Shown here: positions 30,993 to 49,314 of the stretch, piece after piece | Numbering within the stretch: the stretch's first letter is position 1 | Layout: each line of letters opens with the position of its first letter | Sequence record: NC_070958.1 | Direction: 5' to 3' (one strand) | Length of the DNA stretch: 64,000 bases | The notes under the pieces: model-generated | Databases searched by the model: none | What the model was told of the DNA's origin: nothing | Seen by the model: the letters and a program-made list of their open reading frames with translations, nothing else | Translations under genes and position numbers: made by a program

Positions 30993-30993
30993 T

Positions 30994-31026
30994 AACTCTC
31001 TGTCACCCAATGGGTGACAGAGAGTT
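30994..31026. terminator. Intrinsic terminator
   Basis: AACTCTCTGTCACCC/GGGTGACAGAGAGTT 15-bp stem with T-rich flank. Confidence 0.85.
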
Positions 31027-31228
31027 TACTATTTATTATTTCTTTTTGGTCATCGGAATGACAACAGGGCGTTTATACCTGTCATCACCACGACAACTTC
31101 TGGGTTGGAACGCGAGATCAATACCTTCTGTGCTGTGATCAGCTATTACATGTACCTTTCTATTTATGCGCAACCCGAAATTAGTCATGGATTCAACGTT
31201 AAAAATTAATATGGAAATGAATTCAGAC

Positions 31229-31246
31229 ATATATAATTACAGTGTA
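31229..31246 (+). promoter_or_regulatory. Putative phage promoter motif, copy 6 (variant)
   Basis: ATATATAATT-acag-TGTA upstream of the YadA-like gene. Confidence 0.5.
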
Positions 31247-31356
31247 AATACATACGGTATTTATATCTAACTTAACTTGTTATGTTTTGACTAGAACTAT
31301 AGTCAAACAAACCTACTTGTAATTTTTCAAGTAGATAAACAAAGAGGAAATACTCT

Positions 31357-34227
31357 ATGAAGAAGTCATGCATTGCCATTCTGGTTTGGGCCGCTGTATC
31401 GGTTGCACCTTTCAACGCTACAGCGGCGAATATGAACGTTGACCAAGAAGGAACTTGGAGTCCCAACTGGGTCGATAAAAACGAAGGTGGTTACAACAAC
31501 GGGACCCGCAACCCGTATTGTAAAGATAATGAAAACGCCGGAAGCTGGGGTGCTGATGGTTGCACTCAAAACCACAAGAACGATGAATACGTTCAGTGGG
31601 GCGAGATGCGTGGTGTAGTTGCTGACATTCAAACCCTCAACACCTGGACCACCTGGAACAACGAGCACGTCAAAGCAGCCGAGAAAGACATTGCGGTCAT
31701 CAATGGCAAGATCGAGAAATTCGAATACGTCGGAACCCAGATCGCCGGCAACATCGATGTCATCGTTGACAAGGGTACCAGTGTCGTCGAAGGTGCTAAG
31801 ACCAGCATCAACAACAGCATCGACGGTAAGATCGAAATCGCCAAGGGTGAAGTTAATACCCAGATCGACAACTCCATCACTAACATTGTGAACGGTGGCA
31901 ACACCGAAATCAATGCCAAGTGGGAAGGTGCCAAGGCCACCGCTAACGATTTCGACGAGCGGATCACCGCTAACAAGAATCGTATCGATGACCAAGCCGG
32001 TCGTATTGGTAAGGTTGAAGATCTCAGTGCACAGAACGCCAAAGATGTCAAAGCAGCTAACAAAGAACTTGTCCGTCTGGACAATGTCAAAGCTGACAAG
32101 ACTGACCTGGACGCTCTGGGTGGTCGTGTCGACGTAATCGAAGGTGACGTAGCCACCATCAATGGTAAGATCGAGAAGGTTGAAGGTAACAAAGACCTGA
32201 TCATCTCCAAGGCTGGCGATGCGTACACCAACGTACGTACCGACATCACCAACGAAATCAACAGCACTGTAACTGGTGCAATTGATGTTGCGATTGACAA
32301 TGCCAAAACCACTGTGAACAACAAGTGGGAAGAAAACAAAGGTGACATCGTTGCCAATGTTAACGGCAAAGTCGAGAACATCCAAAATGACATCACCAAC
32401 AACGTGATGAACCAAATTGGTGACATCGTAATTGATGGTAACAGCGAAACCGTTATCAACATCAAGAACGACATTACCAAGGATGTAACCAACCAACTCA
32501 AACTCGATGGCAAGGGCGTTGCTCTGAACATCAAGAAAGAGATCCAGGAAGGTAACAACGACATCTACAACAACATCTCCGGTAAGATCGAAGGTAAGTT
32601 CGATGATCAGTACGCTACCCTGGTAGCTATGGGTCAGGCTGAGTCCGATCGTCTGGAAGTTAAGAAGGCTGACAAAGCAGATCTCGATGCCGCTGTACAA
32701 GCTGGTAAAGATGAAGCTGCCAACATCAATGCTTCTATTGGTGCAATGGGTGACCGTGTAACCAATGTTGAAGGTGACGTGTCCAACATCAAGCAGGATG
32801 TAACCAACATCCAGGGTGATATCACCACTATCCAAGGTGACGTTGCTAACATCAACGGCAAAATCTCTTACGTCGAAAACAACAGCCAGGAAATCATCAA
32901 CAAGGCTGGTGCTGCTGTAGACGCCAAGATCGATGTTGCTTACGAAGGTGCCAAGACCGAAGTGACCAATCTGTACGACAACGCTCGTACCGAAATCACT
33001 AACGAAATTGACAACGCCGTAAACGTTGCTGTGGAAGGTGCTCGTACTGAAGTTAACAACAAGTACGAAACCATCAAGAACGAAGTCGTTAACGGTGATA
33101 ACAACACCTACAATTCCATCAAAGCTGACATCAGCAAAGATGTGAAGAACGAAATCGTCAACAACATCACTGAAGGTAACAATACCGTTGTAAACGAAAT
33201 CAAAGATGGTCTGGTTGAAGAAATCCGCGAAGAAGGTAAAACTGTCGTAGTGGATCTCCAAGACCAAATCGATGCGGCTAACGCACGTATCGATGTACAG
33301 ACCGGTCGTGGTGAGCAAGCTTGGGCTTCCTATCAAGAAGACCGTGCGTATGCCACCCAGCAGTATACCCAGGATCGTCAAGTTGCCGTAACCACTTACA
33401 ACAACGCCCGCGTTGAAGCTGAAAGTGCTTATGTTACTATGGATGATAAGAAAGCCGACAAGTCCGATCTGGATGTATTGAATGACAAAATCGATGGTGT
33501 CGCTGCCAACGGTAAGACCGACGAAGAAATCAAGGCTATCGCAGACCAAGCTGCTGCTGACGCTGTGAACAATGCCAAGAAAGAAGTCGTCGTGGCTGTT
33601 AAAGACAAAGCTCCCGCAGCTAACGAAGCTGTAACCGCTGCTAAGACCGAAGCTAAAAAGCAGGTACAAGCTAGTATCGATGCGTCTATCTCCAAAGCGA
33701 AAGCTGCCGCTAAAGACCAAGCTGGTCAGGCTGTTGCTGCTGCTAAAGAGAAAGCACGTGCCGAGCTGGCCGCTGCCATGCCTGAGCTGAAAGGTAAAGC
33801 AGAAGTTGTTCGTACCGAAGCTGTTGAAACCCGCAAGCGTGCTGACCTGGCCCTGAAAGCCACCCAGGACAACCACACTGCAATTCAACAAGAGCGTGCT
33901 GATCGTATCCAAGGTCAGCGTGAGACTCTGCAATCTGCCAACAACTACACTGATCAGAAAGTTGAACAACTGCGTGGTGAAGTCGAGCATAACCGTCGTA
34001 AAGCTGCCGCTGGTATCGCTGGCGTGGCTGCAATGACCAACATCCCGACTATCTCCCAAGGTAAGAACTTCGCGATTGGTGCTGGTATGGGTTACTACGA
34101 TGGCGAGCAATCCCTGGCTATCGGTTCCCAAGGTCGTTTCAACGAGAACCTCACTGGTAAAGCAACTATCTCCACCGACTTCCACGGCAACACTGTAATT
34201 GGTGCTGGCGTAGGTTTCGAGTGGTAA
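31357..34227 (+). CDS. Trimeric autotransporter adhesin (YadA-like)
   Basis: Sec signal MKKSCIAILVWAAVSVAPFNATA; long coiled-coil stalk with NGKI and KADKxDL repeats; ANNYTDQKV connector; C-terminal YadA anchor AAAGIAGVAAMTNIP...FAIGAGMGYYDGEQSLAIG...GAGVGFEW. Confidence 0.92.
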   Translation: MKKSCIAILVWAAVSVAPFNATAANMNVDQEGTWSPNWVDKNEGGYNNGTRNPYCKDNENAGSWGADGCTQNHKNDEYVQWGEMRGVVADIQTLNTWTTWNNEHVKAAEKDIAVINGKIEKFEYVGTQIAGNIDVIVDKGTSVVEGAKTSINNSIDGKIEIAKGEVNTQIDNSITNIVNGGNTEINAKWEGAKATANDFDERITANKNRIDDQAGRIGKVEDLSAQNAKDVKAANKELVRLDNVKADKTDLDALGGRVDVIEGDVATINGKIEKVEGNKDLIISKAGDAYTNVRTDITNEINSTVTGAIDVAIDNAKTTVNNKWEENKGDIVANVNGKVENIQNDITNNVMNQIGDIVIDGNSETVINIKNDITKDVTNQLKLDGKGVALNIKKEIQEGNNDIYNNISGKIEGKFDDQYATLVAMGQAESDRLEVKKADKADLDAAVQAGKDEAANINASIGAMGDRVTNVEGDVSNIKQDVTNIQGDITTIQGDVANINGKISYVENNSQEIINKAGAAVDAKIDVAYEGAKTEVTNLYDNARTEITNEIDNAVNVAVEGARTEVNNKYETIKNEVVNGDNNTYNSIKADISKDVKNEIVNNITEGNNTVVNEIKDGLVEEIREEGKTVVVDLQDQIDAANARIDVQTGRGEQAWASYQEDRAYATQQYTQDRQVAVTTYNNARVEAESAYVTMDDKKADKSDLDVLNDKIDGVAANGKTDEEIKAIADQAAADAVNNAKKEVVVAVKDKAPAANEAVTAAKTEAKKQVQASIDASISKAKAAAKDQAGQAVAAAKEKARAELAAAMPELKGKAEVVRTEAVETRKRADLALKATQDNHTAIQQERADRIQGQRETLQSANNYTDQKVEQLRGEVEHNRRKAAAGIAGVAAMTNIPTISQGKNFAIGAGMGYYDGEQSLAIGSQGRFNENLTGKATISTDFHGNTVIGAGVGFEW

Positions 34228-34242
34228 CGTAATAAAGTGATA

Positions 34243-34276
34243 AACTCCTACCTCCCTTAACGGGGAGGTAGGAGTT
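34243..34276. terminator. Bidirectional intrinsic terminator
   Basis: AACTCCTACCTCCC/GGGAGGTAGGAGTT stem between convergent genes; closely similar to the 2091 terminator. Confidence 0.85.
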
Positions 34277-34300: not shown

Positions 34301-37300
34301 TTACTTGACCATATTGATCGGAACAGTTACACGCCAATCCTTGGTTCTGAGGGATGTTTCTTGATCAGTGAATGTGAAGGACACATCTCCTGTACCAGCC
34401 TCACCTGTGGATGTGACTGTCATGGTTGTGTACCCGGAAGGATCCGGCTCACCAGTGATCTGTCCGACACTCTGGAAGAATCGATCATTCTTGACGACAT
34501 CCTTAGTGATGTTACCCTTCATAACCTTGAACTGACCACCCCACCTGTCTTGTCTCAGTACAAACTTAACTGTCGATGTCGCGTTATTAACCGCAGTACC
34601 TTCAGTCACACTAAGGACATTGACGGGTTGCTCCGGACAAACGTAAGTTCCCTCACACCTGACATTGAATTGCCGTTTAGCAATGGTTACCACCAATTCA
34701 GGCCAGAATTCACCACCGAGATGGCTAGTACTGACAGAGAGGTAGTATACGCCAGGGGCTGCCGATGGGGAGTGAATAAGGCTATTAGAATAACCTTGGA
34801 TTACAGGTAAACCAGGATCCTTGTTCTTCATACTCAATGTAAAGAAGGCCGCTCCCTGGAGAGGTTCCCCATCCACTTCAATACGGCACTTGATCCGTTG
34901 CATCTTGATGGGTTCAATACCTTCACTATCCGGATAGAGTACCAGATCAGTGATGGGTGGTCGAGCCATCTCAATGTTGCCAACCACACTGTGGGTGGTC
35001 ACTTTACCATCGGGCGCGGTATAAGTCGCACGAATAGTAAACGGTACGTCGTCGGTACTGAAGTAGGCGTCACGGTTAGTGAAGAACAGAAGTCCATTCG
35101 CATCAGTACCACGTTTCTCCATTGCGGTCTGGTTAACAACCCCTTCCCAAGTCTTGTCAAACGTAACTTCGATTTGGACATTGGGATCGTCAATAGCCAC
35201 TGGCTTATCGTCGTAAGAAAGTGACATGGGCATGCTTTCTACTTCGTACGGCTGCCAGTTCAACAGTGCTTGGTGGGTGATAAGGATATTCTCATCAGCT
35301 TTCACTGTAGAGTCTATCGTTACCTTAGCCACCTGTGCTTCTGTAGGTGTTGTGATATCGTTCCTTGTAAACGCCACTACGTTCTTGTGGGATCCAGGTG
35401 CGATCATCTTCCAAGGAAGGTCAAGACTCTTCCCAGTCACCTTTTCGGGAACACCGATCTGTAAACCACCGGTGGTCGTAGTGAAAGCGGGAACTGTCTT
35501 GTGGTTATCCGTGAAACGAGTCTCATCATTCCACAATGCAAATGACACCACACCCTTATCGTCACGTTTACCGTCAAGAGTGAACAGATTAGGTATCGCC
35601 AGGAAATCAGGACCGTCGTAAGGCTTGAGAGTGAACTTCTTGGTGTACGAGAAACGACGCCAGCCATTATCGACACCAATAGCCATATCAAACTTTACAT
35701 CTACCACCTTTTCCTCGGTTACTTTCTTGATGTAGAGCCACGCTGTTTTATCCCAAGTATAAGGATCGATATGCTTCACGACTTCTTTACCAGGTGTGGT
35801 AACAAAGTCAATCAAGACATCTCTTGTCCGTTCTTCGCCGTTCACCAATACCTTAACTGGGAGGCCGCCACCATCATAACGATTTGCAATAATGTTTTCG
35901 CCGGACAGCGGAATGACAGAGATAACGGAATCTTTGACGATATTGGGATAGACGTAAAGTTGGTCCCACCAAATCGTTCCCTGAGGAGATACGTAGTGAC
36001 TCTTGAATCCAACTGTGTCGGTCACCATCACACCAGGTTGACCAGAGTCTCTGATCACTTCATAGAACAACCGGTTAGGTTCGGCACGAGTCAACTGGAT
36101 AAGTTTCTTGGGTCCCAATTCTTCACCAACTGGGAAATCCATGTCCTCAGTAGGAATGTTCTTCCCACCAATTGCGGCGATATAGTTGGTGTAGAGTGTC
36201 TCCCCTTTCTTACCAGTCAAGCCGTTGGGATCCAATTTGACCTGTGTGAGTCTACCGTATCCAGGGATGGCTTTGGTGATTTCCAGATCAATGAAACACT
36301 TGGCCGTGTAAACCTCGGTAAGGACTGTATGACGGAACGTCCCTATCAACAGGTCTAACAACACCCCGTCTGTGACAGCGTTGGTAATCGGACCTGTATA
36401 GAGGACACCACCCTTGTACTCTCCCTTGGACCGAACACTTACGCCGTGGAGCATGGATGTCATGTATTCCGGGACAGTTGCCAGTTTAATGGGTGCGCCT
36501 TTAAACTTCGCCTTCACCACGATACCCAGCTCGGCGCCAGTCGGTGCGTTAATAAGCAACGGATATCCGTAAAGCGTTAAATCAGAAGGAGTGTCTTTCT
36601 GGATTTTCACGATCATCTTTGCGGTAGTGTCGTAGTCGAAACCACCAGAGCTATGGATCATGTTTACTTGGATTTCCTCAATGAAATCTTCAGTAGCTGA
36701 TCCACGGAATGCCTTGATCACCATTTCCAGCTTGTTATCAGTGCGCTCGATGACCAATCGGTTAGACGGACTAAACGTCATGTCTACAAGAGTGGTAACG
36801 TCCACGTCACCAATGGTGAGTTTGAGGTTATGTCGGGCCTCTTGTCCACGCTGGATGTTGACGTTCTTGGGGATGTTGTGTTGTATGTCATTTAGACCCA
36901 ACTCTTCCCGGATTAGCTCACTTACGTAGATGATGACATTCTCGCTCCCGATCGCTTCGTCTGTTACCTTTACAGTTCCAGAAGTAAACGTGTTGGGATC
37001 GATGTCAGTGGCGTTCTTTCTCGACAACTCCATCGATTTAAAGAAGATATCTCCAAAGAGATCATTGATCGCTTGGAGATCATTCAGTTGGCGATTGGGT
37101 AAACACACCCCGATTGAATTACGCCAGGCCAAGAACAGCACTTTACCCTGGACGGTACCGCGTTTAAAACCTTCAATGAAATCTTCAAAGGTCATAATCA
37201 CTTCTACCGCGACACCAAAGTCCGTGAGAACGTCTCTGAGCGATACTTGTTCTAACTCCAGGTCAACCCTCGCAAAGTTACGAGAACGTCGTGTAAGGCA

Positions 37301-37510
37301 CACACGTTTGACATTATCAGGTCCTGTATGGACTCGTTCAATGATAAAGTCTTCCGCTTTCATTCCACTGTAACGAACATCGGCAAGTTGACGATCAACT
37401 ATGTCACCCTGTTCTGTTACGAGTTCATGTCGTTTCCGGAGGAAACGTTTAACAGGTGAATACAATGGGTCTTTTACCCATCGTGGAAACACCTTGCTTT
37501 CTTCTGCCAT
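34301..37510 (-). CDS. Large putative tail/baseplate structural protein
   Basis: Start probably MAEESK (ATG 37510); N-terminal domain shared with 37602..45986, 46078..49314 and 60946..61584; beta-rich remainder. Confidence 0.8.
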   Translation of the reverse strand: MAEESKVFPRWVKDPLYSPVKRFLRKRHELVTEQGDIVDRQLADVRYSGMKAEDFIIERVHTGPDNVKRVCLTRRSRNFARVDLELEQVSLRDVLTDFGVAVEVIMTFEDFIEGFKRGTVQGKVLFLAWRNSIGVCLPNRQLNDLQAINDLFGDIFFKSMELSRKNATDIDPNTFTSGTVKVTDEAIGSENVIIYVSELIREELGLNDIQHNIPKNVNIQRGQEARHNLKLTIGDVDVTTLVDMTFSPSNRLVIERTDNKLEMVIKAFRGSATEDFIEEIQVNMIHSSGGFDYDTTAKMIVKIQKDTPSDLTLYGYPLLINAPTGAELGIVVKAKFKGAPIKLATVPEYMTSMLHGVSVRSKGEYKGGVLYTGPITNAVTDGVLLDLLIGTFRHTVLTEVYTAKCFIDLEITKAIPGYGRLTQVKLDPNGLTGKKGETLYTNYIAAIGGKNIPTEDMDFPVGEELGPKKLIQLTRAEPNRLFYEVIRDSGQPGVMVTDTVGFKSHYVSPQGTIWWDQLYVYPNIVKDSVISVIPLSGENIIANRYDGGGLPVKVLVNGEERTRDVLIDFVTTPGKEVVKHIDPYTWDKTAWLYIKKVTEEKVVDVKFDMAIGVDNGWRRFSYTKKFTLKPYDGPDFLAIPNLFTLDGKRDDKGVVSFALWNDETRFTDNHKTVPAFTTTTGGLQIGVPEKVTGKSLDLPWKMIAPGSHKNVVAFTRNDITTPTEAQVAKVTIDSTVKADENILITHQALLNWQPYEVESMPMSLSYDDKPVAIDDPNVQIEVTFDKTWEGVVNQTAMEKRGTDANGLLFFTNRDAYFSTDDVPFTIRATYTAPDGKVTTHSVVGNIEMARPPITDLVLYPDSEGIEPIKMQRIKCRIEVDGEPLQGAAFFTLSMKNKDPGLPVIQGYSNSLIHSPSAAPGVYYLSVSTSHLGGEFWPELVVTIAKRQFNVRCEGTYVCPEQPVNVLSVTEGTAVNNATSTVKFVLRQDRWGGQFKVMKGNITKDVVKNDRFFQSVGQITGEPDPSGYTTMTVTSTGEAGTGDVSFTFTDQETSLRTKDWRVTVPINMVK

Positions 37511-37560
37511 AACTATACCCCTTATTGTCGTCATAGCATTTGAGAATAAACAAAATAAAG

Positions 37561-37601: not shown

Positions 37602-40600
37602 TTACTTGTTGTGGATACCACCACCGAACGCACGGTTATCCAGTGCACGGTTCACAACAGCATCCAAGGTTTCGTTGTTCGGGTACTTGTAAGTACCGGT
37701 CAACTGGAAGTCCGAAGGTGTTGCATTCGGACCCGCACCAGGGAATGTCGCTGTCAAGATACCGGTTGCAGGATCGTAAGTTTCGTTGGCTACGCCAGCG
37801 CCATCGGTACGACCTGGGGTGTACACGCGAGTAACTGTCGGACCCAACTTAACAGACGGACTGAACGAACCATCGGCTTCTTTACACATCATGGAGAAGT
37901 TGACATTACCACCACCCCAAGAGATGTCATACAACTCAACGTTACGCGCACCCTTCACAGGGATGGACGTTGCTGAGAAGCTGATAGTGAACGGAACGTA
38001 CACTTCTGCGTTCTCCGCATTACCGTCTACCTTGATCCAGCCATTACCGTTGTAGTTGGTACCGGCGGCGTCAGGAGCTGCAACAGCGTAGGTTGTTACA
38101 TACGCACTCTCGTTGTTCAGGTGTTCACAAACGTAACGATTAGTGCCAGGAATGAGACCCGTCATGTTACCGAATACGTAAGTGGCTTGTCTCGGCATGA
38201 CCGAGTTAGCACCCGGAACCAGGTTGTGAGACATTTTCAGGTTGTTACCAATCCAGGTGTAGCCTGTGGTGTTTGCACTGTAGTACCAAGCGCGACGAGA
38301 ACCAGAAATCTGGGTCTTGGCCGCCGCTTCGGTTGTTACCATTGCAGTACAACCAACGAGCATGCTCAGGTCAACAGGAATCGGTTCGATGTCGAACTGA
38401 ACTGTGAGAACACCAGTTGCTGGGTCATAAGCACTGCTCTTCACATCCAGGGAACCACCCTTAGAACCTTGTGCTGAATCCAGCTTGGTCACGGTAGCTT
38501 CAGTCGGAAGATCGTTAGTGTTATTCTTCAGCGTGTACTTCATTGTGGCCACGTTATCCTTGACGGAAACAGAATCCAGCGTTGAGACGTACGGTCCTTT
38601 AGGAAGAACATTGGTGTAATCCAGAACCCAAGGAAGTCTTACCTCCAGGTTATCCGGTTGTTTGAGCGACAGGTATCCATTACCAGTGTAATGGGTGTCC
38701 TGTGTTGTACTCGGAGCAGCTACGTTGTAGTCGATGATCCAAGATACTTCACCCTTGTTGTGGATGGTACCAACCGCACCTGTTGTCGCAGACGGATTAA
38801 CTGCCAGTGCCACGAACGCGCCGTCACCTTGGAAGTTGTAACCACCGTTAAGCGTCACATAGTAGTCACGCTGTAAGCGACCATTTTTCCATTCGATGCC
38901 GATGTCACGCATTTCGAAGACGTTCTGTACGAAGTCGACTTTGTACTTAGCGATCTGTCCATCATTGGTAGTGATTTCCATATCCGCTTCGAACTTATCG
39001 GCCCAAGAACCAGTGAGGATCTTGGTCTTCGCAGACCAGCTCAGGGTGCCAGTCGCAGGATCGTAGGACTGTGTGAGTTGGTTAGAGACGTTATCGAGGA
39101 AACCCTTCACCGGAGTGAACTTGGTAATCCGAGCACTAGTTGGGATTGTCCCGGTCAGATCCATTTTCAGTTTCTGGGAGAACAAATCAACTTGGTGGTA
39201 CTGACTAACAGGACCTGCGGAAGGAACAATCGGTTCACTATAGTCCACAGTGAACGGGATGATTACCTTAACCTTGTTACCCTTGTCGACGCTGTAGTTA
39301 CCAGTCCCCGTGGTCTTGTACGGACGGATGTCAGTACGACGTGGGAGATTCAGTTTCCACACCTTGTCACCGGCAGTGTGATCCAGCAAGCTAGCAGTGC
39401 CAGCATTGTTGGTGTATTCAACACCATTCAGTACGAGGTTGTCGATAGCCACGGTGCCCGCTGTTACTTCATGGTCAAGGACCAGAGCGTTAGCACCCAG
39501 CGTTGCGTTCACACTCTTAACGAGATGTTCCACATGCTGGTAGGTCACGTGAGGCTTGAAGGTACTACCATCTTCGTTACCGGAATCAATGGTGCCCTCG
39601 AGGATAACTTCAACTGGTGTTGCGCCACTAGGAGCGTCACAGTCATAAGTCACCACAAAGAGACCGGTTGTCTTGTCATAGACAGGAGGTTTGGTCGAAG
39701 AGATGGTCGCGCCAGTTGCCACAGGTTCACCGACAAACTTAACATCAGGCGGGAATGCACCATCGTTATTGGCAAACTTGTAGGTCTCTACCAGTTCATT
39801 GTTAGTGATAACAGTGCTGACCTTGGTAGGAGTGTAAATAACCGGAGCAGGAGGTACCACAGCCTTGGTAACTTCCATCTTACTATCCAACGCCGGTTTG
39901 GTGATGTTATCGCCATAAGCCGGGAAGTTCACACGACTGTTGAAGGTCGCCTGACCACCGTTCTTAGCGAACGCATCAGTCATCTCGAACACAAATGTCA
40001 AGATGCCAGTTACTGGATCGTAGCTTTCACTCTTAGGTGTCTTGGTTCCGTTCAGGGTATTCAGAACGTAGTCGAACGGCTTATTGGTATAAGCTGTGCC
40101 TTTCGGAACCCCGCCTTGGGCAAAAGCGTTGTTAACTGTCACTGTCAACAGGTTGCCTTCCAGCTCCATGTCTTTCAGCCAGGTGTTAACGTAACCGTTG
40201 TTAGTCAAGAACTGCTTGAAGGTACAAGTCCACGGGAGTGCGTAGAACAGCTTACCACCTGCGTTGGCCATGAACTTACCGCTGACCTTGTAGACAGTAA
40301 CGTCATCAGTCTTCGGAGGAGTTGTTGGGACATAGCACAGATAGAAGATGTTCGGGGTAGCACTACCGGTCTTCTCGGTACGGATGGGTCCGGTTGATTC
40401 AGGATCAGCCGAAGTCACCACGTGGTAACCTTCAGTGATGTCTACATCACCAGCATTGCGCTTCACCTTGTGGGTGACACGGAACGCCTTTTCGTAGTCC
40501 TGCCATCCAGCGTTGGTCTGGGTGACACTATGGACATACAGGGTGTGAGTGAGAGGAGCGGTCAGCTCTTTGACACCAGCCTTGAACACCGGGTTGATCA

Positions 40601-43600
40601 CAACAGGGAGTGCGGCCGTACCGGTCGGTTTGGTAATCCCAACCTTGAAGCTGAAACGACCAGTTTGGTCATCATAAACTTCTTCAGTTGCTACACCGTC
40701 GATGTTGGAAGGAGAAGAGAACGCCTTAACCATCATCTCTGTCGGAATGCTGCCGTCACCATTGGTGATGTCATAGACAATCGCCATAGTTGCGTCGTCA
40801 ACAGTACTGGAGACGTGAGTAGCGATCAGAATCCGATCCGGGTTAACAATAGCCTCGAACAGTGTGTCCTTACCAATGCCACCGTCGTCGGCCCAGATAT
40901 CGGTTACGAACTTGATCTTCTCGCCATCCAGCAACGGGTTCATCTCGAATACAAACGAACCTTCACCAGTTGCAGGATCGTACTTGTACAGCTCACCGTC
41001 GACACTCAACGGAGTGCGGTTCCCGCCAACAGTTTTCTCGGCTGAACTGAACGGTGTTTTCAGGCGGAGATTGAACGGATAGGCATCACCTTCCGGAGTG
41101 ACCTTGAAGGAGACGGTCAACTGGTTAGTATCCACGTCATACTTCCCACCAAGGGTGGTGGTGGTAAAGGTCTTCGGTTTAGGCAAGATGTAACTGCCGC
41201 GAGTCACAGTCGGTGTGATGAACCCACACAGGGACTTCAGCTTGATTGTCCCGATAGCCGAAACGGAGGTTTGTGCAGTCGCATTACCGTAATAGTGAAC
41301 CACCACAGTAATTACACCAGTCGCAGGATCGTAGCTTTGGGCCTGGATTTTCCCGTTATCGGCAGTGTTGGACCCACTAATGGCTCCTGTAAAATATCCA
41401 TCCAACGGGATCTTGCCGTCTTTGGTCCTGACATCAACCAACCAACTCACCGCCATGACCGGTCGAGTTCCAACAGGGACATTTACTTGTTTGTACTCGG
41501 GGTCGTTCCGGAATATAGCTGTGCCTTCATTCACATCTGAGAGCACGTGGTAATCAGAACGAGAAGCTGTTACCGTCATATTCTCGAACGGGTAATTGAA
41601 CTCCAGAGTCCAATCCCAGCGGTTTCTCGGGTCCTCGTGCATCGGAACAGCGACGGTACCGACCCAGACGTTACGATCTTCACCTTCTGTGGCTTTACGT
41701 TTCCAGACAAGCTCAGCTTCGAAGCCAGGATGGTTCCCGCCATTACTAATCTTGAAGTTGGTCAGCTTGGCGGCCACATCTACAGAACTAACGCCCTTGG
41801 TATCGCGGAACGAATACTCAAACTTGAGTTCTTGGTTGCAATAGGACTTGTTCAGCAGATAGATGGTCAACGGCTCCACCGTCTCGGTCACACGGAACGG
41901 GACTTCGGTATCTTCAACCAGTACGATCCCCTCGTAGTCGTACCGTACCGGAACAGTGGTCACTTCCTTAGCTGTTACGCTATAAGTGATGGTCATGGTC
42001 CCGGCATTGTAATTCTGGGAAACCGGGTTAACCCCTTCCAGGCCAGTCCCACCATTGATGGGTTGAACCACAACAGTTGTCGGTGCAGGAGAGCCATCGT
42101 TAGCCACGACTTTACCGGAGTGAGTGATCAACTTGGTGGTCATCACCGGCTTTTCCCAGACAATGGAGTACGCGCTCTTAGCTGTCGTTTCCACAGTGTA
42201 GGACTCAGAGGCGTTCGGGTATTCGTCGGCGTAGACACGACCTTCAACCAGGTAGTTGGTACCCTCACCACTCGGATTCTCCAGAGCGATATCAGCGTAC
42301 ACAGTTCCTGTATTGACGTCGTAACGACGATTGGTCAATTCCTTGGTACCGTTCTTGGTATTCACCGCACGGGTAACCGGAGTCACCAGTGTAGCACCTT
42401 CAGGGATGGTGTCGTCGGACAGACGAACTTGCATACTGACAGTACCGATGGTCCCGTTAACAGTCAGTTTGGCCTCAGTCACCTTGATCGGGGTACGAAT
42501 AACTTTGACGACCACGTCATCGATGAACTGAAGTTCCGGCTTACCAACATACGGAGTCAGAATTACTGACCCAACGAATGCGTACGTCATATCCTTGGAA
42601 GGATCGAGTGTCACAGTCGCTTCGAACTTGGCGAGACCAGTCACGGGATCGTAACTCGTGTCTTCCTTGGTGATCGGAGTCGCAACGTTGGTTGCAGTAG
42701 CAAACGGAATCTTGAAGTCAGCGGCTACTGGGTAGGACCCGTCTGCAAGCCGAACCTTGTAAATGCCGATTGCTTTATCACCGACAACTTCCAGAGACTG
42801 GAGAGTGATACTAGGATCGGTGTTTCCAGTGCCATCGTCCGGGAGAGTCCAGGAATCAGGTTTCACTGTACCAGTTGTTTCGGCTACAGCGTAGCTGGTA
42901 CCAGAAGGAACAGTTGCACTTACGGTGAGCGCATACTTCTCGATGGTGTCGTTCGGTGCAATGATGTCCGCACTAACTTCCCACAAGCCCTTGCTCTTAT
43001 CAATCTCCTTGAAGGAGAACTTGGGATCAGCAGCGATGTTCTCACCAGAAACATAGGCAAGTGTGGCGTCGCCGGTGTAGGCGGCATCACCAAGGTACAG
43101 CCCTACCTTCCTGACGATACGGAGACCATTGAGTGTGGTTTCAACATCGGTTGCAGTGAGGTCGAGTACCAGGTCCTTGACGGATACGGTGAACAAGGAA
43201 CCATCTGCTTCGATACGAGCGTTGTAGGTGATCGGTTCGATCACACCTGTCTTCAACACGAGGTCGAAGTACAAGACACCGGTACCCGGGTGGTAATCCT
43301 GGTTAGGCGTTCCCTGATCAGGTGCGATACCAGAGATGGAACTGGCGTCGTAGAACTTGGCATCGCCGGGATGTACGTTGGGGGAGCCGATACGATTGAT
43401 CCGAACGGTATGACGGATCTTGTCACCCATCAACTTGACACCCAGGTCGGTAGCTTCCCATTCCACCTCGCCGCTATTGGTGTACGTTCCGGTGAAATCA
43501 CCAAACAGAGGCTTCTTGAAGTCGTCTGCTTTGAACTCACCCTTGGCGGAGTAAACGTTATCGCCCAGATCGGGGTAAACGATATCCACTGTCAGCGTCC

Positions 43601-45986
43601 AGAAGTCACCGGCCTTTTCCAGAGTGTGAGTACCATTGGGTTTGAGACCGACTGTATTGGTCAGACCCAACAGAGTCAGATCTTTAACCTTGGAACCATC
43701 ATCACTGTAGGTTGCGTCCAAAGTCCAGCGAAGTTTGGGATCGGCTCTGTCCAGGAGGAACTCGGTGTTCGTGGTGGTGAAGTTGATTTCGAGATCGTTA
43801 TCGAATACAGCTTCGAATTTGGCGGTTGCTGTTTTCACAGTTCCGTCGCGTTCGTGAGTGCCGTGGACAACCCATTCGAAGTCGACAGTAAGTTCTACCG
43901 GATCATTTCCATAAGCAGTCAGTTCTGCGGAAACGGTACCGGATTGGAGATCGACGTCCCAACCTGGTTGAGAGAAACTTTCAGGTACGAGACCTTTGAT
44001 GTTTTCCATGCCTTTGGGGTCGATAGCCGGAATGTCTTTACCATCAGACAGTACAGCGTTATACGGCCACGTTACTTTGGTCGGTGCGCGAGGGGAATCG
44101 AACACTCCCTTGCCTGGTGTGATGACAGCACTGACCACAGTCACCCAAGTACCATCACCGTTGGTGGTTCCAAACGGAGTGGACGGGGTGCTACAGACTA
44201 CGCTGAGTTTTACGGAGATCTTGATCGGCTCAATGTCCGGATCAGGAATGATAACGATTGTCACGAAACCATTTTCGATAACCGCTGCGTCACGCATTGT
44301 CCCACCAACGATGGCCGGGAATACGTTTGCGATCATCGGATCGTTCGGGCTTTCAGAGTTGTCTACCTTAACACGATAAGTGACCAACTGGGTCTTTTCA
44401 TCGTAGGTGAGAGTCTGTTGGGTGAACGTGATGACCGGATCACCGGTGGTATCGAACTCCTTGGAGAACTTCATGGAGTAGGGAATCATCTCCTCCAGGT
44501 CGTCGATCTTCGCTTCACAGAAAAGTTCGATCTCGTACTTCTCAGGCGTTTGCGGAATCACGGTTATGTCGTGATAGACCTCACCGTTTTCGGTGATGAC
44601 ACCAGGTCCCGCATTGTTGTTGTCTTCCAAACCAACAGTCCCCGGAAGGAACTTATTGGAGCGTTGTGTGAAGTAAGGAACGATCCCACCCACATAACGG
44701 AAACGACCAACCATGTTCAGTACTGGACCGAATGCGGGTTCATCATAGACAAACTCGATCTCCGGGCGCACTTCCTTAGGGATGGAAACTTCGGTTTCTG
44801 CTTTGCGGAGACCGATATCCCACTTATGGGTTTGAGCACCCATCGTCTCAGTTTTCAGAGTGAACGTGTAAACATCACCATCGACTGATTTGACTTCTGC
44901 TGTTTCAGACTTCAGCTTGTCGGACAGACCAGTGACATATTCACCAGTATAGGTGTCTTTCACTTTGGCCGTCAAGGTGTACGCATCAACAACTGCCACT
45001 TGTTCGATGACCAAGCGATCCACGTCGACGCCACCAGTGAACTCAGCGCTCTTGGTCACTGACTTAGAACCTTCAGTGTCTTTCCGAGTGAAGTCCACTT
45101 TAACGGTCAAAGTACCGAGGAACTGATCGTTGACCTCTTCGTCACCGGTGTACGGTTCGAATTCACTGTAAACAGTAGCGACTGTTTTGTGTTCAGTCAC
45201 AGAGAGTTCGTTGGAAAGTTCCAGACGGAAACCAGCAGGTACTTTGTAGTCACTAGCGATGCTAACTACCGGTGACATGGTTTCGATACCCTGCCAGTGT
45301 GCTACCAGTTCGATATCGAACTTGGCTACGACACCAGTCTTGTTTTCCATGCCAGTTGCACGACTAGGGTTGATCTTGACGACCATACCGTCGCCGCCAT
45401 CCAGGTTCTCGTCATAAACGAAAACTGCTACCGGGGTGGGTTCCAGGAGTGACCGATCATTGACCATCATGGTGTAGTCAGCACTGAGTGGATGGGCGTC
45501 CTCGGCGGAAACATCCAGGCGATCAAAGAAGATGTTGGAAGTGGCTTCACGGAGACCACCTTCACCTTTCAGAGTCTTGAGGAAGAGACAATACTGTCCG
45601 GTCGGTTCATAAAACACGTACTCGAAATCCCAGTTGTTACTGCGGAAGAGTGCGTGAAGTTCACCGATAGTTTTAACGGTTTTGACGTTAGTCTCCATAC
45701 CAGTCAGGATTTCACCGAAGGGCAAACGCTCTACAGGGATATCCACCCGACCGAAACCGGTAATGCGTGAAGTGATACAAACCAAAGACTCACGATCCCC
45801 CTGGATGGGTTCGATACGCACATCTTCGGCTTTAAGGTTATTGTAGCGCTCTCTCGCTACTTCGAGTTCGCCCTTGGGATCATCGATTTCGAGATCAGCA
45901 AGGCGCTTTGCGAGGAACCGTTGTACAGAGACCCAGAATGGATCACGTACAAAGGCACTCCTTTCAACAATCAACCCGTTTTCCAT
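37602..45986 (-). CDS. Giant (2794 aa) putative tail fibre / receptor-binding protein with Ig-like repeats
   Basis: Shared N-terminal domain; about a dozen Y(D/H)xxTG motifs in T/V/P-rich beta-sandwich-like repeats. Confidence 0.85.
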   Translation of the reverse strand: MENGLIVERSAFVRDPFWVSVQRFLAKRLADLEIDDPKGELEVARERYNNLKAEDVRIEPIQGDRESLVCITSRITGFGRVDIPVERLPFGEILTGMETNVKTVKTIGELHALFRSNNWDFEYVFYEPTGQYCLFLKTLKGEGGLREATSNIFFDRLDVSAEDAHPLSADYTMMVNDRSLLEPTPVAVFVYDENLDGGDGMVVKINPSRATGMENKTGVVAKFDIELVAHWQGIETMSPVVSIASDYKVPAGFRLELSNELSVTEHKTVATVYSEFEPYTGDEEVNDQFLGTLTVKVDFTRKDTEGSKSVTKSAEFTGGVDVDRLVIEQVAVVDAYTLTAKVKDTYTGEYVTGLSDKLKSETAEVKSVDGDVYTFTLKTETMGAQTHKWDIGLRKAETEVSIPKEVRPEIEFVYDEPAFGPVLNMVGRFRYVGGIVPYFTQRSNKFLPGTVGLEDNNNAGPGVITENGEVYHDITVIPQTPEKYEIELFCEAKIDDLEEMIPYSMKFSKEFDTTGDPVITFTQQTLTYDEKTQLVTYRVKVDNSESPNDPMIANVFPAIVGGTMRDAAVIENGFVTIVIIPDPDIEPIKISVKLSVVCSTPSTPFGTTNGDGTWVTVVSAVITPGKGVFDSPRAPTKVTWPYNAVLSDGKDIPAIDPKGMENIKGLVPESFSQPGWDVDLQSGTVSAELTAYGNDPVELTVDFEWVVHGTHERDGTVKTATAKFEAVFDNDLEINFTTTNTEFLLDRADPKLRWTLDATYSDDGSKVKDLTLLGLTNTVGLKPNGTHTLEKAGDFWTLTVDIVYPDLGDNVYSAKGEFKADDFKKPLFGDFTGTYTNSGEVEWEATDLGVKLMGDKIRHTVRINRIGSPNVHPGDAKFYDASSISGIAPDQGTPNQDYHPGTGVLYFDLVLKTGVIEPITYNARIEADGSLFTVSVKDLVLDLTATDVETTLNGLRIVRKVGLYLGDAAYTGDATLAYVSGENIAADPKFSFKEIDKSKGLWEVSADIIAPNDTIEKYALTVSATVPSGTSYAVAETTGTVKPDSWTLPDDGTGNTDPSITLQSLEVVGDKAIGIYKVRLADGSYPVAADFKIPFATATNVATPITKEDTSYDPVTGLAKFEATVTLDPSKDMTYAFVGSVILTPYVGKPELQFIDDVVVKVIRTPIKVTEAKLTVNGTIGTVSMQVRLSDDTIPEGATLVTPVTRAVNTKNGTKELTNRRYDVNTGTVYADIALENPSGEGTNYLVEGRVYADEYPNASESYTVETTAKSAYSIVWEKPVMTTKLITHSGKVVANDGSPAPTTVVVQPINGGTGLEGVNPVSQNYNAGTMTITYSVTAKEVTTVPVRYDYEGIVLVEDTEVPFRVTETVEPLTIYLLNKSYCNQELKFEYSFRDTKGVSSVDVAAKLTNFKISNGGNHPGFEAELVWKRKATEGEDRNVWVGTVAVPMHEDPRNRWDWTLEFNYPFENMTVTASRSDYHVLSDVNEGTAIFRNDPEYKQVNVPVGTRPVMAVSWLVDVRTKDGKIPLDGYFTGAISGSNTADNGKIQAQSYDPATGVITVVVHYYGNATAQTSVSAIGTIKLKSLCGFITPTVTRGSYILPKPKTFTTTTLGGKYDVDTNQLTVSFKVTPEGDAYPFNLRLKTPFSSAEKTVGGNRTPLSVDGELYKYDPATGEGSFVFEMNPLLDGEKIKFVTDIWADDGGIGKDTLFEAIVNPDRILIATHVSSTVDDATMAIVYDITNGDGSIPTEMMVKAFSSPSNIDGVATEEVYDDQTGRFSFKVGITKPTGTAALPVVINPVFKAGVKELTAPLTHTLYVHSVTQTNAGWQDYEKAFRVTHKVKRNAGDVDITEGYHVVTSADPESTGPIRTEKTGSATPNIFYLCYVPTTPPKTDDVTVYKVSGKFMANAGGKLFYALPWTCTFKQFLTNNGYVNTWLKDMELEGNLLTVTVNNAFAQGGVPKGTAYTNKPFDYVLNTLNGTKTPKSESYDPVTGILTFVFEMTDAFAKNGGQATFNSRVNFPAYGDNITKPALDSKMEVTKAVVPPAPVIYTPTKVSTVITNNELVETYKFANNDGAFPPDVKFVGEPVATGATISSTKPPVYDKTTGLFVVTYDCDAPSGATPVEVILEGTIDSGNEDGSTFKPHVTYQHVEHLVKSVNATLGANALVLDHEVTAGTVAIDNLVLNGVEYTNNAGTASLLDHTAGDKVWKLNLPRRTDIRPYKTTGTGNYSVDKGNKVKVIIPFTVDYSEPIVPSAGPVSQYHQVDLFSQKLKMDLTGTIPTSARITKFTPVKGFLDNVSNQLTQSYDPATGTLSWSAKTKILTGSWADKFEADMEITTNDGQIAKYKVDFVQNVFEMRDIGIEWKNGRLQRDYYVTLNGGYNFQGDGAFVALAVNPSATTGAVGTIHNKGEVSWIIDYNVAAPSTTQDTHYTGNGYLSLKQPDNLEVRLPWVLDYTNVLPKGPYVSTLDSVSVKDNVATMKYTLKNNTNDLPTEATVTKLDSAQGSKGGSLDVKSSAYDPATGVLTVQFDIEPIPVDLSMLVGCTAMVTTEAAAKTQISGSRRAWYYSANTTGYTWIGNNLKMSHNLVPGANSVMPRQATYVFGNMTGLIPGTNRYVCEHLNNESAYVTTYAVAAPDAAGTNYNGNGWIKVDGNAENAEVYVPFTISFSATSIPVKGARNVELYDISWGGGNVNFSMMCKEADGSFSPSVKLGPTVTRVYTPGRTDGAGVANETYDPATGILTATFPGAGPNATPSDFQLTGTYKYPNNETLDAVVNRALDNRAFGGGIHNK

Positions 45987-49000: not shown

Positions 49001-49314
49001 AAATCCATGAACAACTCTTTGAAGGGAAGCGGATGAACCTCTACGTCAAAACGTGCGTATCCGTTAGTACGGTAAGCAATGGTACTGTACGTTACGCCGT
49101 CTTTTACAACGGGCGGCTCTACACTGTTGTTAGTGGGGGTCGGATTCAGATAACGTTTGCGCAATTCCGCTATCTGTTCTTCCGTCGGGTTTTTGAGCTC
49201 GGCGATACGCTCTTCACACACCTTAGCCAGCGCAATTTTAACTGCTGGCCAAGAAGGGCTGAGGATCGACCGATCACGGTTAATCGTGAAATCGACTGAC
49301 ATGGGTTTCTCCAT
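46078..49314 (-). CDS. Large putative tail/baseplate structural protein
   Basis: 1078-aa ORF; shared N-terminal domain (PSWPAVKIALAK...KRYLN...GYARFDVEVHPLPFKELF). Confidence 0.8.
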   Translation of the reverse strand: MEKPMSVDFTINRDRSILSPSWPAVKIALAKVCEERIAELKNPTEEQIAELRKRYLNPTPTNNSVEPPVVKDGVTYSTIAYRTNGYARFDVEVHPLPFKELFMDLVQHTKTFTGLYECATVSDMIAMAPFHTGKGDYFYVVETNKFYYFARKALLGNDIYNFPVVTDIIFEKMSGFHFPTSINPAVDPQSVIIEDLAIDGTGEIVLLSGDKLDEESEKTFLAIFPKKVAYDENVGSVTVNLTLSKKPDFEPSVLVGKNLRWAGPAVFTKDFTGSLRKINDLEYTAELEFILPLHMETLESSSLVFEAELSNEQGDKKVSSDSTFMFEATLDQSRFRNNGFIATKAGSFYYKNAGRVTLPQGFMFLLGDDAEKITAIPDSWELKGPFADIGQMTYVEKLGLHHIECRVTGCDNAELSMTFDKRVAVHPFIAGARMKDLSFDFAQVPTAGTDPLFSAKLQLTVEHEFNHPGFRDLWVFPTSNPNEPWGDPHEYDMDGTADDLYRIISDPLIRPYGSTERFIASHPGEWFELQTRFQHDEYETIWTLDLYHQLQVIECRTDLDLAGESKLAIEALVHPSRPNELYIRDWFLKEGFYNKSLVQVLKTGFLDSPFADKDGKMVEMTKIVVLDKDYVHGTEISLTLPVGCIKDGLQYFNVVTVTLTPKVVYPDITCTYSPGERSLVFTPLIGTPYTNEYAVPVTFESVSGILNNLEFIHEEIPYGQVTNRQSVSLKLRVIDENLPASLIRPVLNFKVQDKEVSIPDQWAYFYHQGLGNTHIPQAVQFRKESSGTTSFAMLKNVLPSFLPSVVNLKMPLVGIVEAKVEEGTMFAVFHTDVPHGNLWTEPMGNGTYVLEITYPGLDNPIKGNVLKGPPIPPYGKNPGFELTSNPEDMEAVLSFQYLRMNDLAMDAHDVHVVDLNGNRGSVLNSGAVVHSTPVENSITPIERPYQPLLVSPVGLTGWFIESGQVFTHKPPLLAGWVHELVEGEWDHEYFQPWNVVYRNTETGEVVENTARNLVEIISYSVNGESNSPRVKFSQEGVRFTNPARVTPDEKVTVRAKFRAGTWEGEVKPTFVATITLTT

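What the first reader, a model, noticed from the sequence alone, without database searches (positions are those of the whole stretch)
31357..34227. Complete trimeric autotransporter adhesin encoded by a jumbo phage
Seen: Sec signal peptide, a roughly 800-aa coiled-coil stalk and an intact YadA-type beta-barrel anchor ending in GVGFEW. The stalk has three related blocks (DIAVINGKIEKFE / DVATINGKIEKVE / DVANINGKISYVE, each followed by a segment ending in AKWE/NKWE/NKYE) and three KADKxDLD motifs. It is a stand-alone unit with its own promoter motif and terminator. Knowledge: TAAs need Sec and BAM for assembly and are known in temperate phages (Eib proteins), where they act by lysogenic conversion. 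Inference: here it is displayed on infected cells and could clump them with uninfected hosts, mask receptors or block superinfection.
Basis: partly seen in the sequence, partly recalled or inferred. Interest (0 to 1): 0.7.

Follow-up and report, generated by a model that had tools for sequence, protein, structure and literature searches.

The report
Phage-encoded outer-membrane adhesin fibre gene
A lytic giant virus of the fish and human pathogen Aeromonas carries an intact, well-conserved gene for a very long bacterial-style surface adhesin, probably made early in infection and planted in the outer membrane of the infected cell; the gene was already annotated, similar genes are known in other lytic phages, and what it does is still untested.

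Summary
Window 31357-34227 (+) is an intact 956-aa ORF with an N-terminal signal peptide, a roughly 810-residue helical stalk, and a YadA-type anchor (Pfam PF03895, 53.8 bits against a cutoff of 22.7) that ends in an aromatic residue. The three stalk blocks, the three KADKxDLD motifs, the downstream terminator and the promoter motif are all real.

The window comes from Aeromonas phage D6 (Ludhianavirus, Chimalliviridae), a lytic phiKZ-like jumbo phage. GenBank already names this gene "putative YadA-like protein". YadA-anchor genes occur in 84 of 50,697 phage records, most of them virulent phages, and this was noted in print in 2013. The kind is therefore not new.

New here:
- The gene has a 33-nt phage promoter motif (about 31 sites in D6, all on the + strand, none before annotated structural genes). 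It is probably an early promoter.
- dN/dS is 0.03-0.09, so the gene is under strong purifying selection.
- The protein is a mosaic. The tip and one stalk block are swapped between sister phages and shared with Proteus/Providencia (pro)phage adhesins, while the anchor-proximal half stays constant.
- The stalk family is mostly phage-borne.

It is most likely an adhesin displayed on infected cells, not a virion fibre. Its biological role is untested.

The parts
30994..31026 (+). Terminator-like hairpin (15-bp stem) that closes the upstream + strand gene array (D6_0157-0162) and isolates the adhesin unit from it
31036..31230 (-). D6_0163, a 64-aa divergent ORF. It is a truncated C-terminal remnant (one large deletion) of a 447-aa gene that is intact in phage LAh10 (LAh10_84). 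Its first codons lie inside the promoter motif of the adhesin gene.
   Evidence: no Pfam hit for the intact LAh10 gene
31217..31249 (+). 33-nt phage promoter-like motif, probably an early promoter read by the virion RNA polymerase. It scores 30.8 bits and ranks 21 of about 31 sites in D6.
   Evidence: kept 105-142 nt upstream of the adhesin start in LAh10, D3 and D9; the class is assigned by analogy with PMC7598289
31250..31356 (+). Probable 5' untranslated leader with two small hairpins (31287-31308 and 31313-31334) and the AGAGGA ribosome-binding site (31343-31348)
   Evidence: RNA fold z = -2.9 against shuffles; no covariation test was possible
31357..31428 (+). Sec-type signal peptide, residues 1-24, with predicted cleavage after residue 23 or 24
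   Evidence: hydropathy, A-x-A; homologues have the same type of N-terminus
31429..31692 (+). Distal tip ('head'), residues 25-112. It is rich in Trp, Asn and Gly and has two Cys. It is an orphan domain shared only with LAh10; D3 and D9 carry an unrelated, longer N-terminal module in its place.
   Evidence: one hit among 1.84 billion representatives; dN/dS 0.036
31693..32145 (+). Stalk block 1, residues 113-263 (INGKIEK ... AKWE, ending at the first KADKTDLD motif)
32146..32664 (+). Stalk block 2, residues 264-436 (INGKIEK ... NKWE, periodicity 3.74-3.84). It is replaced in LAh10 (37% identity) but is 56-57% identical to a Proteus prophage adhesin.
32665..33426 (+). Stalk block 3, residues 437-690 (second KADKADLD, a perfect heptad run at 459-524, INGKISY ... 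NKYE, then a 3.75-3.84 segment)
33427..33936 (+). Membrane-proximal stalk rich in Ala, Lys and Glu, residues 691-860, including the third KADKSDLD motif. It is nearly invariant in D6, D3 and LAh10.
33937..34227 (+). Last stalk helix plus the YadA-type membrane anchor, residues 861-956 (Pfam match 899-956; four beta strands at 905-954; C-terminal ...GVGFEW), and the stop codon
34243..34276 (+). Intrinsic-terminator-like hairpin (15-bp stem, 8 G-C pairs) between the convergent adhesin gene and D6_0165

Best explanation
The gene encodes a genuine trimeric autotransporter adhesin (type Vc secretion) that the lytic, nucleus-forming jumbo phage D6 makes during infection.

Shown:
- The ORF is intact and has a signal peptide, a long helical stalk built from three homologous blocks, and a YadA-type anchor.
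- It carries its own copy of a phage promoter motif and its own terminator.
- It is under strong purifying selection.
- Its tip and one stalk block are exchanged as cassettes between sister phages and with adhesins of Proteus/Providencia (pro)phages.

Inferred:
- The motif is the phage's early promoter, so the gene is transcribed soon after injection.
- The precursor is exported by the host Sec system. The C-terminal 12-stranded barrel (four strands from each of three chains) is inserted by the host BAM machinery, and the stalk passes through it. The infected cell then carries fibres up to about 120 nm long (about 810 helical residues at about 0.15 nm each) with the variable tip outermost.
- The tip binds a ligand and makes the infected cell sticky towards neighbouring cells or surfaces. 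Progeny would then be released next to new hosts.
- The protein is not a virion part.
For: Architecture:
- Pfam anchor above its cutoff.
- Sequence matches to the solved Hia and YadA anchors.
- One helix followed by four strands in the model.
- Signal peptide and C-terminal aromatic residue.
- Mixed 3.5 and roughly 3.75 periodicity, typical of these stalks.

Selection:
- dN/dS is 0.03-0.09 over every segment. The tip keeps dN/dS 0.036 at dS 0.6.

Expression unit:
- Upstream and downstream hairpins.
- The 33-nt motif scores 30.8 bits, with none found in shuffles. It is conserved upstream of the gene in all four phages even though the leader and tip differ.
- The roughly 31 D6 sites are all on the + strand, ahead of arrays of small genes and ahead of RNA-polymerase-subunit genes D6_0046 and D6_0060. 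None lies ahead of an annotated structural gene.
- In phiKZ-like phages such a motif marks early promoters (PMC7598289).

Lifestyle:
- The record annotates a tubulin-like protein and five split RNA-polymerase subunit genes, and no integrase.
- D6, D3 and LAh10 are placed in Chimalliviridae (PMC13678102).

Evidence for ligand binding:
- The tip is replaced as a whole in D3 and D9 by a module that also heads a chromosomal Providencia adhesin.
- Block 2 is closer to a Proteus prophage adhesin (56%) than to the sister phage LAh10 (37%).
- The anchor-proximal 520 residues are nearly identical in all relatives.

A persistent phage trait:
- Relatives sit in another phiKZ-like contig at a different genome position, in three other large phage contigs, and at the ends of two prophages.
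Against: - Nothing here shows expression, export, trimerisation or surface display.
- The structure model is a monomer with pLDDT 46.6.
- The promoter class rests on analogy, not on transcript data for D6.
- The tip is an orphan with no recognisable fold or ligand, so 'adhesin' is inferred from family membership.
- The gene lies next to three very large, fast-evolving genes on the minus strand that may be tail fibres.
- The GenBank depositors and PHROGs label the family 'recognition of host receptor' or 'tail protein'.
- It is not known whether a short lytic cycle leaves enough time to assemble a long autotransporter.
Confidence: 0.55

Rival explanations
1. The molecule and its location are the same (an outer-membrane fibre on infected cells), but its role is protective rather than adhesive. 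A dense lawn of long fibres, or binding of a receptor, would block adsorption of competing phages, or stop the phage's own progeny from adsorbing to infected cells and debris. This would be superinfection exclusion or receptor masking.
For: - Probable early expression.
- A very long stalk.
- The constant stalk under purifying selection.
- From established knowledge: virulent phages do encode envelope proteins that block their own receptor, such as the T5 Llp lipoprotein.
Against: - A purely steric shield does not explain why the tip is exchanged as a cassette yet strongly conserved within each type.
- It does not explain why the D3-type tip is shared with a chromosomal Providencia adhesin.
- No similarity to any known exclusion protein was found.
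Confidence: 0.22
2. It is a virion fibre or receptor-binding protein, as the GenBank note 'recognition of host receptor' and the PHROG label 'tail protein' imply. On this view the YadA-like end would serve as a trimerisation or attachment module in the particle.
For: - PHROG 26246 'tail protein' (E=5e-29) and 17426 'adhesin'.
- Adjacency to large, variable genes on the minus strand.
- A 'YadA domain-containing structural protein' was detected in cyanophage virions (PMC9146016).
- Cassette-like tip exchange also typifies tail fibres.
Against: - A cleavable signal peptide would send the chain to the periplasm, away from cytoplasmic tail assembly.
- The C-terminus is a membrane beta-barrel anchor with a terminal aromatic residue, which has no place in a membrane-free particle.
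- The promoter motif is of the class absent from annotated structural genes.
- YadA-anchor genes in phiEco32, FSL SP-076, GAP32 and XbC2 lie among small ORFs or tRNAs, not tail genes, and also start with signal-like sequences (PMC3728262).
- The PHROG labels are unverified annotations.
- It was not checked whether the cyanophage protein has the anchor.
Confidence: 0.07
3. It is a passenger gene, picked up from a bacterium or prophage and carried without any function in the lytic cycle.
For: - The closest cellular and prophage relatives are in Proteus and Providencia, where such genes sit at prophage ends like lysogenic-conversion genes.
- Related Aeromonas jumbo phages outside the genus lack the gene.
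Against: - dN/dS is 0.03-0.09 with substantial synonymous divergence (dS 0.18 to 1.3).
- The gene is intact in four phages from two continents.
- A phage-type promoter is conserved in front of it.
- Its composition matches that of the phage.
- Homologues are kept in several other large lytic phage contigs.
Confidence: 0.05
4. It is an assembly artefact, a host or prophage fragment joined into the phage contig.
For: None found.
Against: - The same locus with the same flanks occurs in four separately sequenced genomes.
- GC is 0.486, against about 0.47 for the window.
- The phage promoter motif lies directly upstream.
- No Aeromonas relative was found among GTDB species representatives.
Confidence: 0.01

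Closest known systems
Trimeric autotransporter adhesins of bacteria (YadA of Yersinia, Hia of Haemophilus; type Vc secretion)
   Same: Signal peptide, fibrous helical stalk with mixed periodicity, and a C-terminal PF03895 anchor with one helix, four strands and a terminal aromatic residue. The sequence matches the solved Hia and YadA anchors.
   Different: It is encoded by a strictly lytic jumbo phage and preceded by a phage promoter motif. No known head, neck or stalk Pfam domain (YadA_head, YadA_stalk) was found, and the tip is an orphan. At about 810 helical residues, the stalk is much longer than YadA's.
YadA-anchor 'agglutinating adhesin' or 'adhesin' genes of virulent phages (phiEco32 gp119, Salmonella FSL SP-058 and SP-076, Cronobacter GAP32 gp424, Xanthomonas XbC2 gp453)
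   Same: They occur in lytic phages, have a signal-like N-terminus and a C-terminal anchor ending in W, lie outside tail modules, and have no known function.
   Different: Only the last 100-140 residues align. Those proteins are 265-577 aa, against 956-1105 aa here. The stalk family here is shared only with the four Ludhianavirus genomes, a few uncultured large phages, and Proteus/Providencia (pro)phage adhesins.
Eib immunoglobulin-binding proteins of E. coli prophages
   Same: They are phage-borne trimeric autotransporters. The relatives P0016 and P0011 sit at prophage ends, as Eib genes do.
   Different: No Eib chain came back from the solved-structure search at E<=1. D6 is not temperate, so lysogenic conversion cannot be the mode of action.
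Envelope proteins of phages that alter the infected cell surface (T5 Llp; lambda Lom and Bor), recalled from knowledge and not tested here
   Same: A phage-encoded protein is exported to the host outer membrane during infection or lysogeny.
   Different: They are unrelated in sequence and fold. They are small lipoproteins or 8-stranded barrels, not 100-nm fibres.

Membership tests
Trimeric autotransporter adhesin (type Vc) | C-terminal YadA-like membrane anchor domain (PF03895) above the family threshold | tested here: met
   53.8 bits against a cutoff of 22.7, residues 899-956. phmmer hits to the Hia (3emo, 2gr7) and YadA (2lme) anchors.
Trimeric autotransporter adhesin (type Vc) | Each chain contributes a linker helix plus four beta strands, and the last residue is aromatic | tested here: met
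   Helix up to residue 894, then strands at 905-914, 917-929, 932-941 and 946-954. pLDDT is 57-69 in this part. The protein ends ...GVGFEW.
Trimeric autotransporter adhesin (type Vc) | N-terminal Sec signal peptide | tested here: met
   Positive n-region, hydrophobic core, A-x-A site. This is a heuristic only, as no dedicated predictor was available.
Trimeric autotransporter adhesin (type Vc) | Fibrous passenger built on a trimeric coiled-coil stalk | tested here: inconclusive
   Helical from residue 85 to 894 in a low-confidence monomer model. Significant 3.5 and 3.74-3.84 periodicities. The trimeric state itself was not modelled.
Trimeric autotransporter adhesin (type Vc) | Homotrimer assembled in the outer membrane, with the passenger exposed on the surface | not testable with these tools
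   This needs envelope proteomics, imaging or a solved structure.
Trimeric autotransporter adhesin (type Vc) | Recognised head or neck modules (YadA_head PF05658, YadA_stalk PF05662). These are common but not obligatory. | tested here: not met
   No such Pfam hit at E<=1. The tip at residues 24-112 has no relative outside LAh10 among 1.84 billion representatives.
Eib-type prophage immunoglobulin-binding adhesins | Sequence similarity to the Eib passenger, and carriage by a temperate phage | tested here: not met
   No Eib chain among PDB hits. The D6 record has no integrase and shows phiKZ-like hallmarks.
Phage tail fibre or receptor-binding protein | Cytoplasmic assembly into the virion, with the gene in a structural module | tested here: not met
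   The signal peptide and membrane anchor are incompatible with cytoplasmic assembly. The promoter motif is of the class absent from annotated structural genes. Actual virion content was not testable.
phiKZ-type early transcription unit | A conserved AT-rich motif shared by many co-directional non-structural operons | tested here: met
   30.8-bit site at 31217-31249. About 31 sites in D6, all on the + strand, and none in shuffles. Transcription timing itself was not testable.

The most novel reading that the evidence does not exclude
Large lytic phages, including nucleus-forming ones, keep a phage-borne family of very long outer-membrane adhesins with interchangeable tips. They express these early, so that the doomed cell is tethered to uninfected neighbours or to a surface. 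This would be a viral strategy for cell-to-cell spread in structured habitats. Tip cassettes traded with prophages and bacteria would set what the infected cell sticks to.
Probability: 0.25. Interest if true: 0.75.

Novelty: new member of a known kind. Interest (0 to 1): 0.4.

Why it matters
Genes for YadA-type adhesins have sat unexplained in the genomes of virulent phages since 2008. This locus is a good case for study because:
- the gene is intact and strongly conserved;
- it probably has an early promoter, in a phage family whose transcription programme is well understood;
- natural tip variants exist in sister phages.

If the protein is displayed on infected cells, lytic phages would be remodelling the host surface for their own spread or protection. 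That bears on phage ecology in biofilms and on how Aeromonas phage preparations behave.

For annotation, the labels 'tail protein' and 'recognition of host receptor' attached to this family are probably wrong.

Tried and rejected
- **Sigma-70 promoter scan:** no + strand match upstream. It is the wrong promoter type for a phage with its own polymerases.
- **Exact or near-exact reuse of the upstream sequence:** the 9-mer TATAATTAC and all 12-mers of the intergenic region showed no recurrence above chance. The motif emerged only from enrichment analysis of upstream regions.
- **Genome-wide k-mer counts:** these gave only coding words and a recurrent GC-rich hairpin.
- **Pfam and PHROG scans of eight neighbouring genes:** no hit at all.
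- **Pfam on candidate shell-protein genes:** nothing. Family placement was taken from PMC13678102 instead.
- **Full-length AlphaFold2 monomer:** pLDDT 46.6, usable for secondary structure only. For that reason no fold search was run, and the second structure job was not used.
- **NCBIfam:** only far-sub-threshold anchor matches to BimA models.
- **Rfam:** one far-sub-threshold hit (29.9 bits against 174.8), treated as noise.
- **PDB search:** it also returned weak coiled-coil matches (E from 1.6e-4 upwards) to heptad-repeat regions of animal-virus fusion proteins, T4 fibritin and reovirus sigma-1. These reflect coiled-coil composition and were not pursued.
- **Literature:** no paper discusses this gene or tests any phage YadA-like protein.

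- Before I recognised D6_0163 as a deletion remnant, a script output and notebook entry 3 recorded bounds of nucleotide colinearity blocks. One of those bounds lies inside that ORF. It is not repeated here.
- The script computed a majority string of the promoter motif in memory. It was never printed, saved or used.
Full report
**What is there.** The window is bases 124001-188000 of Aeromonas phage D6 (MN131137.2, 259,831 bp, genus Ludhianavirus; 100% identity).
- **Signal peptide.** The N-terminus is MKK, then a hydrophobic core, then A-T-A-A.
- **Anchor.** A C-terminal YadA_anchor domain scores 53.8 bits against a gathering score of 22.7. It aligns with the solved anchors of Hia and YadA and ends ...GVGFEW.
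- **Stalk.** Between them lies a passenger that a low-confidence monomer model (pLDDT 46.6) draws as helix from residue 85 to 894, with six short breaks, followed by exactly four beta strands.
- **Periodicity.** It is 3.5 at residues 459-524 and 3.74-3.84 at residues 283-348 and 525-634. From established knowledge of YadA-type stalks, this is the usual mix of left- and right-handed coiled-coil segments.
- **Repeats.** The three INGKI... blocks are true internal repeats (34-43% identity, z 9-18). The three KADKxDLD motifs lie at residues 245, 437 and 699. The first of them is invariant in K, A, D, L and L across 17 family members and coincides with a helix break in the model.

**The phage.**
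- The D6 record annotates a tubulin-like protein, five split RNA-polymerase beta/beta' genes, a phiKZ-like internal head protein and a tail sheath. It has no integrase or repressor.
- A 2026 paper places D3, D6 and LAh10 in Chimalliviridae (PMC13678102).

**A stand-alone unit with a phage promoter.**
- A 15-bp-stem hairpin (30994-31026) ends the upstream gene array, and another (34243-34276) follows the stop codon.
- No sigma-70 match exists on the + strand, as expected for a phage that brings its own polymerases.
- Enrichment analysis of 119 upstream regions of D6 found the word AGATATTAT (the 8-mer GATATTAT occurred 11 times against 0.3 expected). It sits inside a 33-nt motif that also has a T-rich ...TCA part upstream and GTG(T) downstream.
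- A weight matrix finds about 31 sites in D6, all on the + strand. Ten of them are in this window, and 20 shuffled windows held none.
- The site at 31217-31249 scores 30.8 bits, rank 21. The motif is kept 105-142 nt upstream of the adhesin start in LAh10, D3 and D9, although the leader and the first 110 or more codons differ there.
- The sites precede arrays of small genes, nucleotide-metabolism genes and RNA-polymerase-subunit genes D6_0046 and D6_0060. None precedes an annotated structural gene (one search read).
- In phiKZ-like phages a bioinformatically visible AT-rich motif of this kind is the early promoter used by the injected virion polymerase (PMC7598289). Early expression of the adhesin is therefore an inference by analogy, not a measurement.

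**Selection and mosaic structure.**
- D6, D3, D9 and LAh10 all keep the gene intact.
- dN/dS is 0.03-0.09 in every segment.
- The last 520 codons are almost identical in protein while still differing at synonymous sites (dS 0.18 to LAh10).
- The first 275 codons of D6 and LAh10 have dS 1.34, so the two halves have different histories.
- The tip (residues 25-112) is shared by D6 and LAh10 only. It has no other relative among 1.84 billion representative proteins.
- D3 and D9 carry instead a longer N-terminal module with its own signal peptide. That module resembles the start of a chromosomal Providencia adhesin and of several uncultured ones.
- Stalk block 2 (residues 264-436) is 99% identical in D3 and only 37% in LAh10, but 56-57% identical to a Proteus mirabilis prophage adhesin. 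Block 1 is 64% identical to an adhesin on an uncultured large-phage contig.
- The pattern is a constant anchor-proximal half with exchangeable distal cassettes, each of them conserved. This is what one expects of a fibre whose tip binds something.

**Where the family lives.**
- Full-length relatives (27-40% identity) are few.
- One lies on a 169-kb contig that is a distant D6 relative (backbone proteins 29-40% identical and syntenic with D6 229.9-258 kb). There the adhesin sits between orthologues of the D6 genes at 243 kb and 249 kb, not at 155 kb.
- Two lie on related phage contigs that carry Acb1 and thymidine kinase.
- One lies on a contig with ribonucleotide reductase and a T4-type gene.
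- Two lie immediately after prophage tail genes in Proteus-like chromosomes.
- One lies in a Providencia chromosome near a fimbrial usher.
- Among 185,579 species-representative genomes only Proteus cibi gave a full-length match, and no Aeromonas did.
- More distantly, the anchor alone is found in 84 of 50,697 phage records, most of them virulent phages, and in 20 IMG/VR contigs.
- Four of these genes that I read all begin with signal-like sequences, end in W, and lie among small ORFs or tRNAs.
- Moreno Switt et al. 2013 had already pointed out yadA homologues in virulent phages, away from tail genes and of unknown function (PMC3728262). A Serratia phage study found one in a dispensable region (PMC5449768).

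**What it most likely does.**
- Steps shown: the architecture, integrity, selection, expression signals and cassette exchange.
- Steps inferred: early transcription; Sec export; BAM-dependent barrel insertion and passenger extrusion; and display of a fibre up to about 120 nm long on the infected cell.
- The role I think most likely is adhesion through the tip, which would tether the infected cell to neighbouring cells or surfaces.
- A protective role (exclusion of other phages, or of progeny from debris) is the main rival.
- A virion role is unlikely, because a cleavable signal peptide and a membrane barrel do not fit cytoplasmic tail assembly, and because the promoter class differs from that of structural genes.
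- A functionless passenger is unlikely given dN/dS.
- An assembly chimera is excluded by the four genomes and by the phage-like composition.

**Comparison and novelty.**
- By its defining anchor the protein is a member of the trimeric autotransporter family, but it has none of the catalogued head or stalk domains.
- It is not Eib-like.
- The kind, a YadA-anchor gene in a virulent phage, is known, and this very gene is already annotated.
- The additions here are the probable early promoter, the cassette structure, the strength of selection, and the mostly phage-borne distribution of the stalk family.
- I rate it a new member of a known kind, of moderate interest. The open question it makes testable is what lytic phages gain from planting adhesins on their hosts.

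**Limits.**
- No signal-peptide predictor, trimer modelling or transcript data were available.
- The neighbours D6_0165 to D6_0167 have no family hits, so their possible tail-fibre nature is only suggested by their size, variability and paralogy.

Noticed in passing
window 31036-31230 (-); L002 6447-7790 (-); L014 6819-7085 (-): D6_0163 (64 aa) and D3_0162 (88 aa) are C-terminal remnants, each left by one large deletion, of a 447-aa gene that is intact only in LAh10 (LAh10_84). That gene has no Pfam hit. It is transcribed divergently from the adhesin, and its 5' end overlaps the adhesin's promoter motif.
   Followed up: partly
window 5755, 16829, 19428, 26347, 29729, 31217, 51268, 51993, 58983, 62314 (33-nt sites, + strand): Ten copies of the 33-nt promoter-like motif lie in the window, and about 31 in the whole D6 record, all on the + strand. 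They probably mark the early transcription units of this phage. Two sites (D6 record 3494 and 21556) have no obvious + strand gene directly downstream.
   Followed up: partly
window 34301-37534 (-), D6_0165: This 1077-aa protein has no family hit. It has orthologues across OBP-like jumbo phages and about three paralogous places per genome. The part of the gene that encodes its C-terminal region drops to 76-86% nucleotide identity between sister phages, against 95-99% around it, a pattern typical of a receptor-binding protein. In phage D9 the orthologue is annotated as two ORFs (one break).
   Followed up: partly
window 46078-49008 (-), D6_0167: This 976-aa protein is found only in the four Ludhianavirus genomes. 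It is only 61-78% identical among them, far more diverged than the genome average, so it is a second candidate host-range determinant.
   Followed up: partly
window 37602-45986 (-), D6_0166: This 2794-aa ORF has no Pfam or PHROG hit at all.
   Followed up: no
window 31250-31356 (+): The probable 5' leader of the adhesin mRNA folds more stably than shuffles (z = -2.9). It has two hairpins and a weak pairing that covers the ribosome-binding site. The leader sequence differs in LAh10 and D3, and there are too few sequences for a covariation test.
   Followed up: partly
D6 record, several places (not mapped to window coordinates): A GC-rich hairpin-forming word family (CCCCTACCCC... together with its reverse complement) recurs up to 11 times in the genome. 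It is probably a shared terminator.
   Followed up: no
L003 10001-14896 and L042 10001-14110: Two related uncultured phage contigs (200 kb and 77.5 kb; Acb1 and thymidine kinase lie nearby in L042) carry even longer relatives of the adhesin (1631 and 1369 aa) in the same local gene order. Their flanks show no similarity to D6.
   Followed up: partly
window 30993-31160 (-): A sub-threshold Rfam match to Bacteroides sRNA BTnc005 (29.9 bits against a gathering score of 174.8) overlaps the upstream terminator hairpin. I regard it as chance.
   Followed up: no
adhesin residues 128-285 and 456-518: These regions give weak sequence matches (E from 1.6e-4 upwards) to heptad-repeat regions of animal-virus fusion proteins, T4 fibritin and reovirus sigma-1 in the PDB search. 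I read them as shared trimeric coiled-coil composition, not homology, and did nothing further with them.
   Followed up: no
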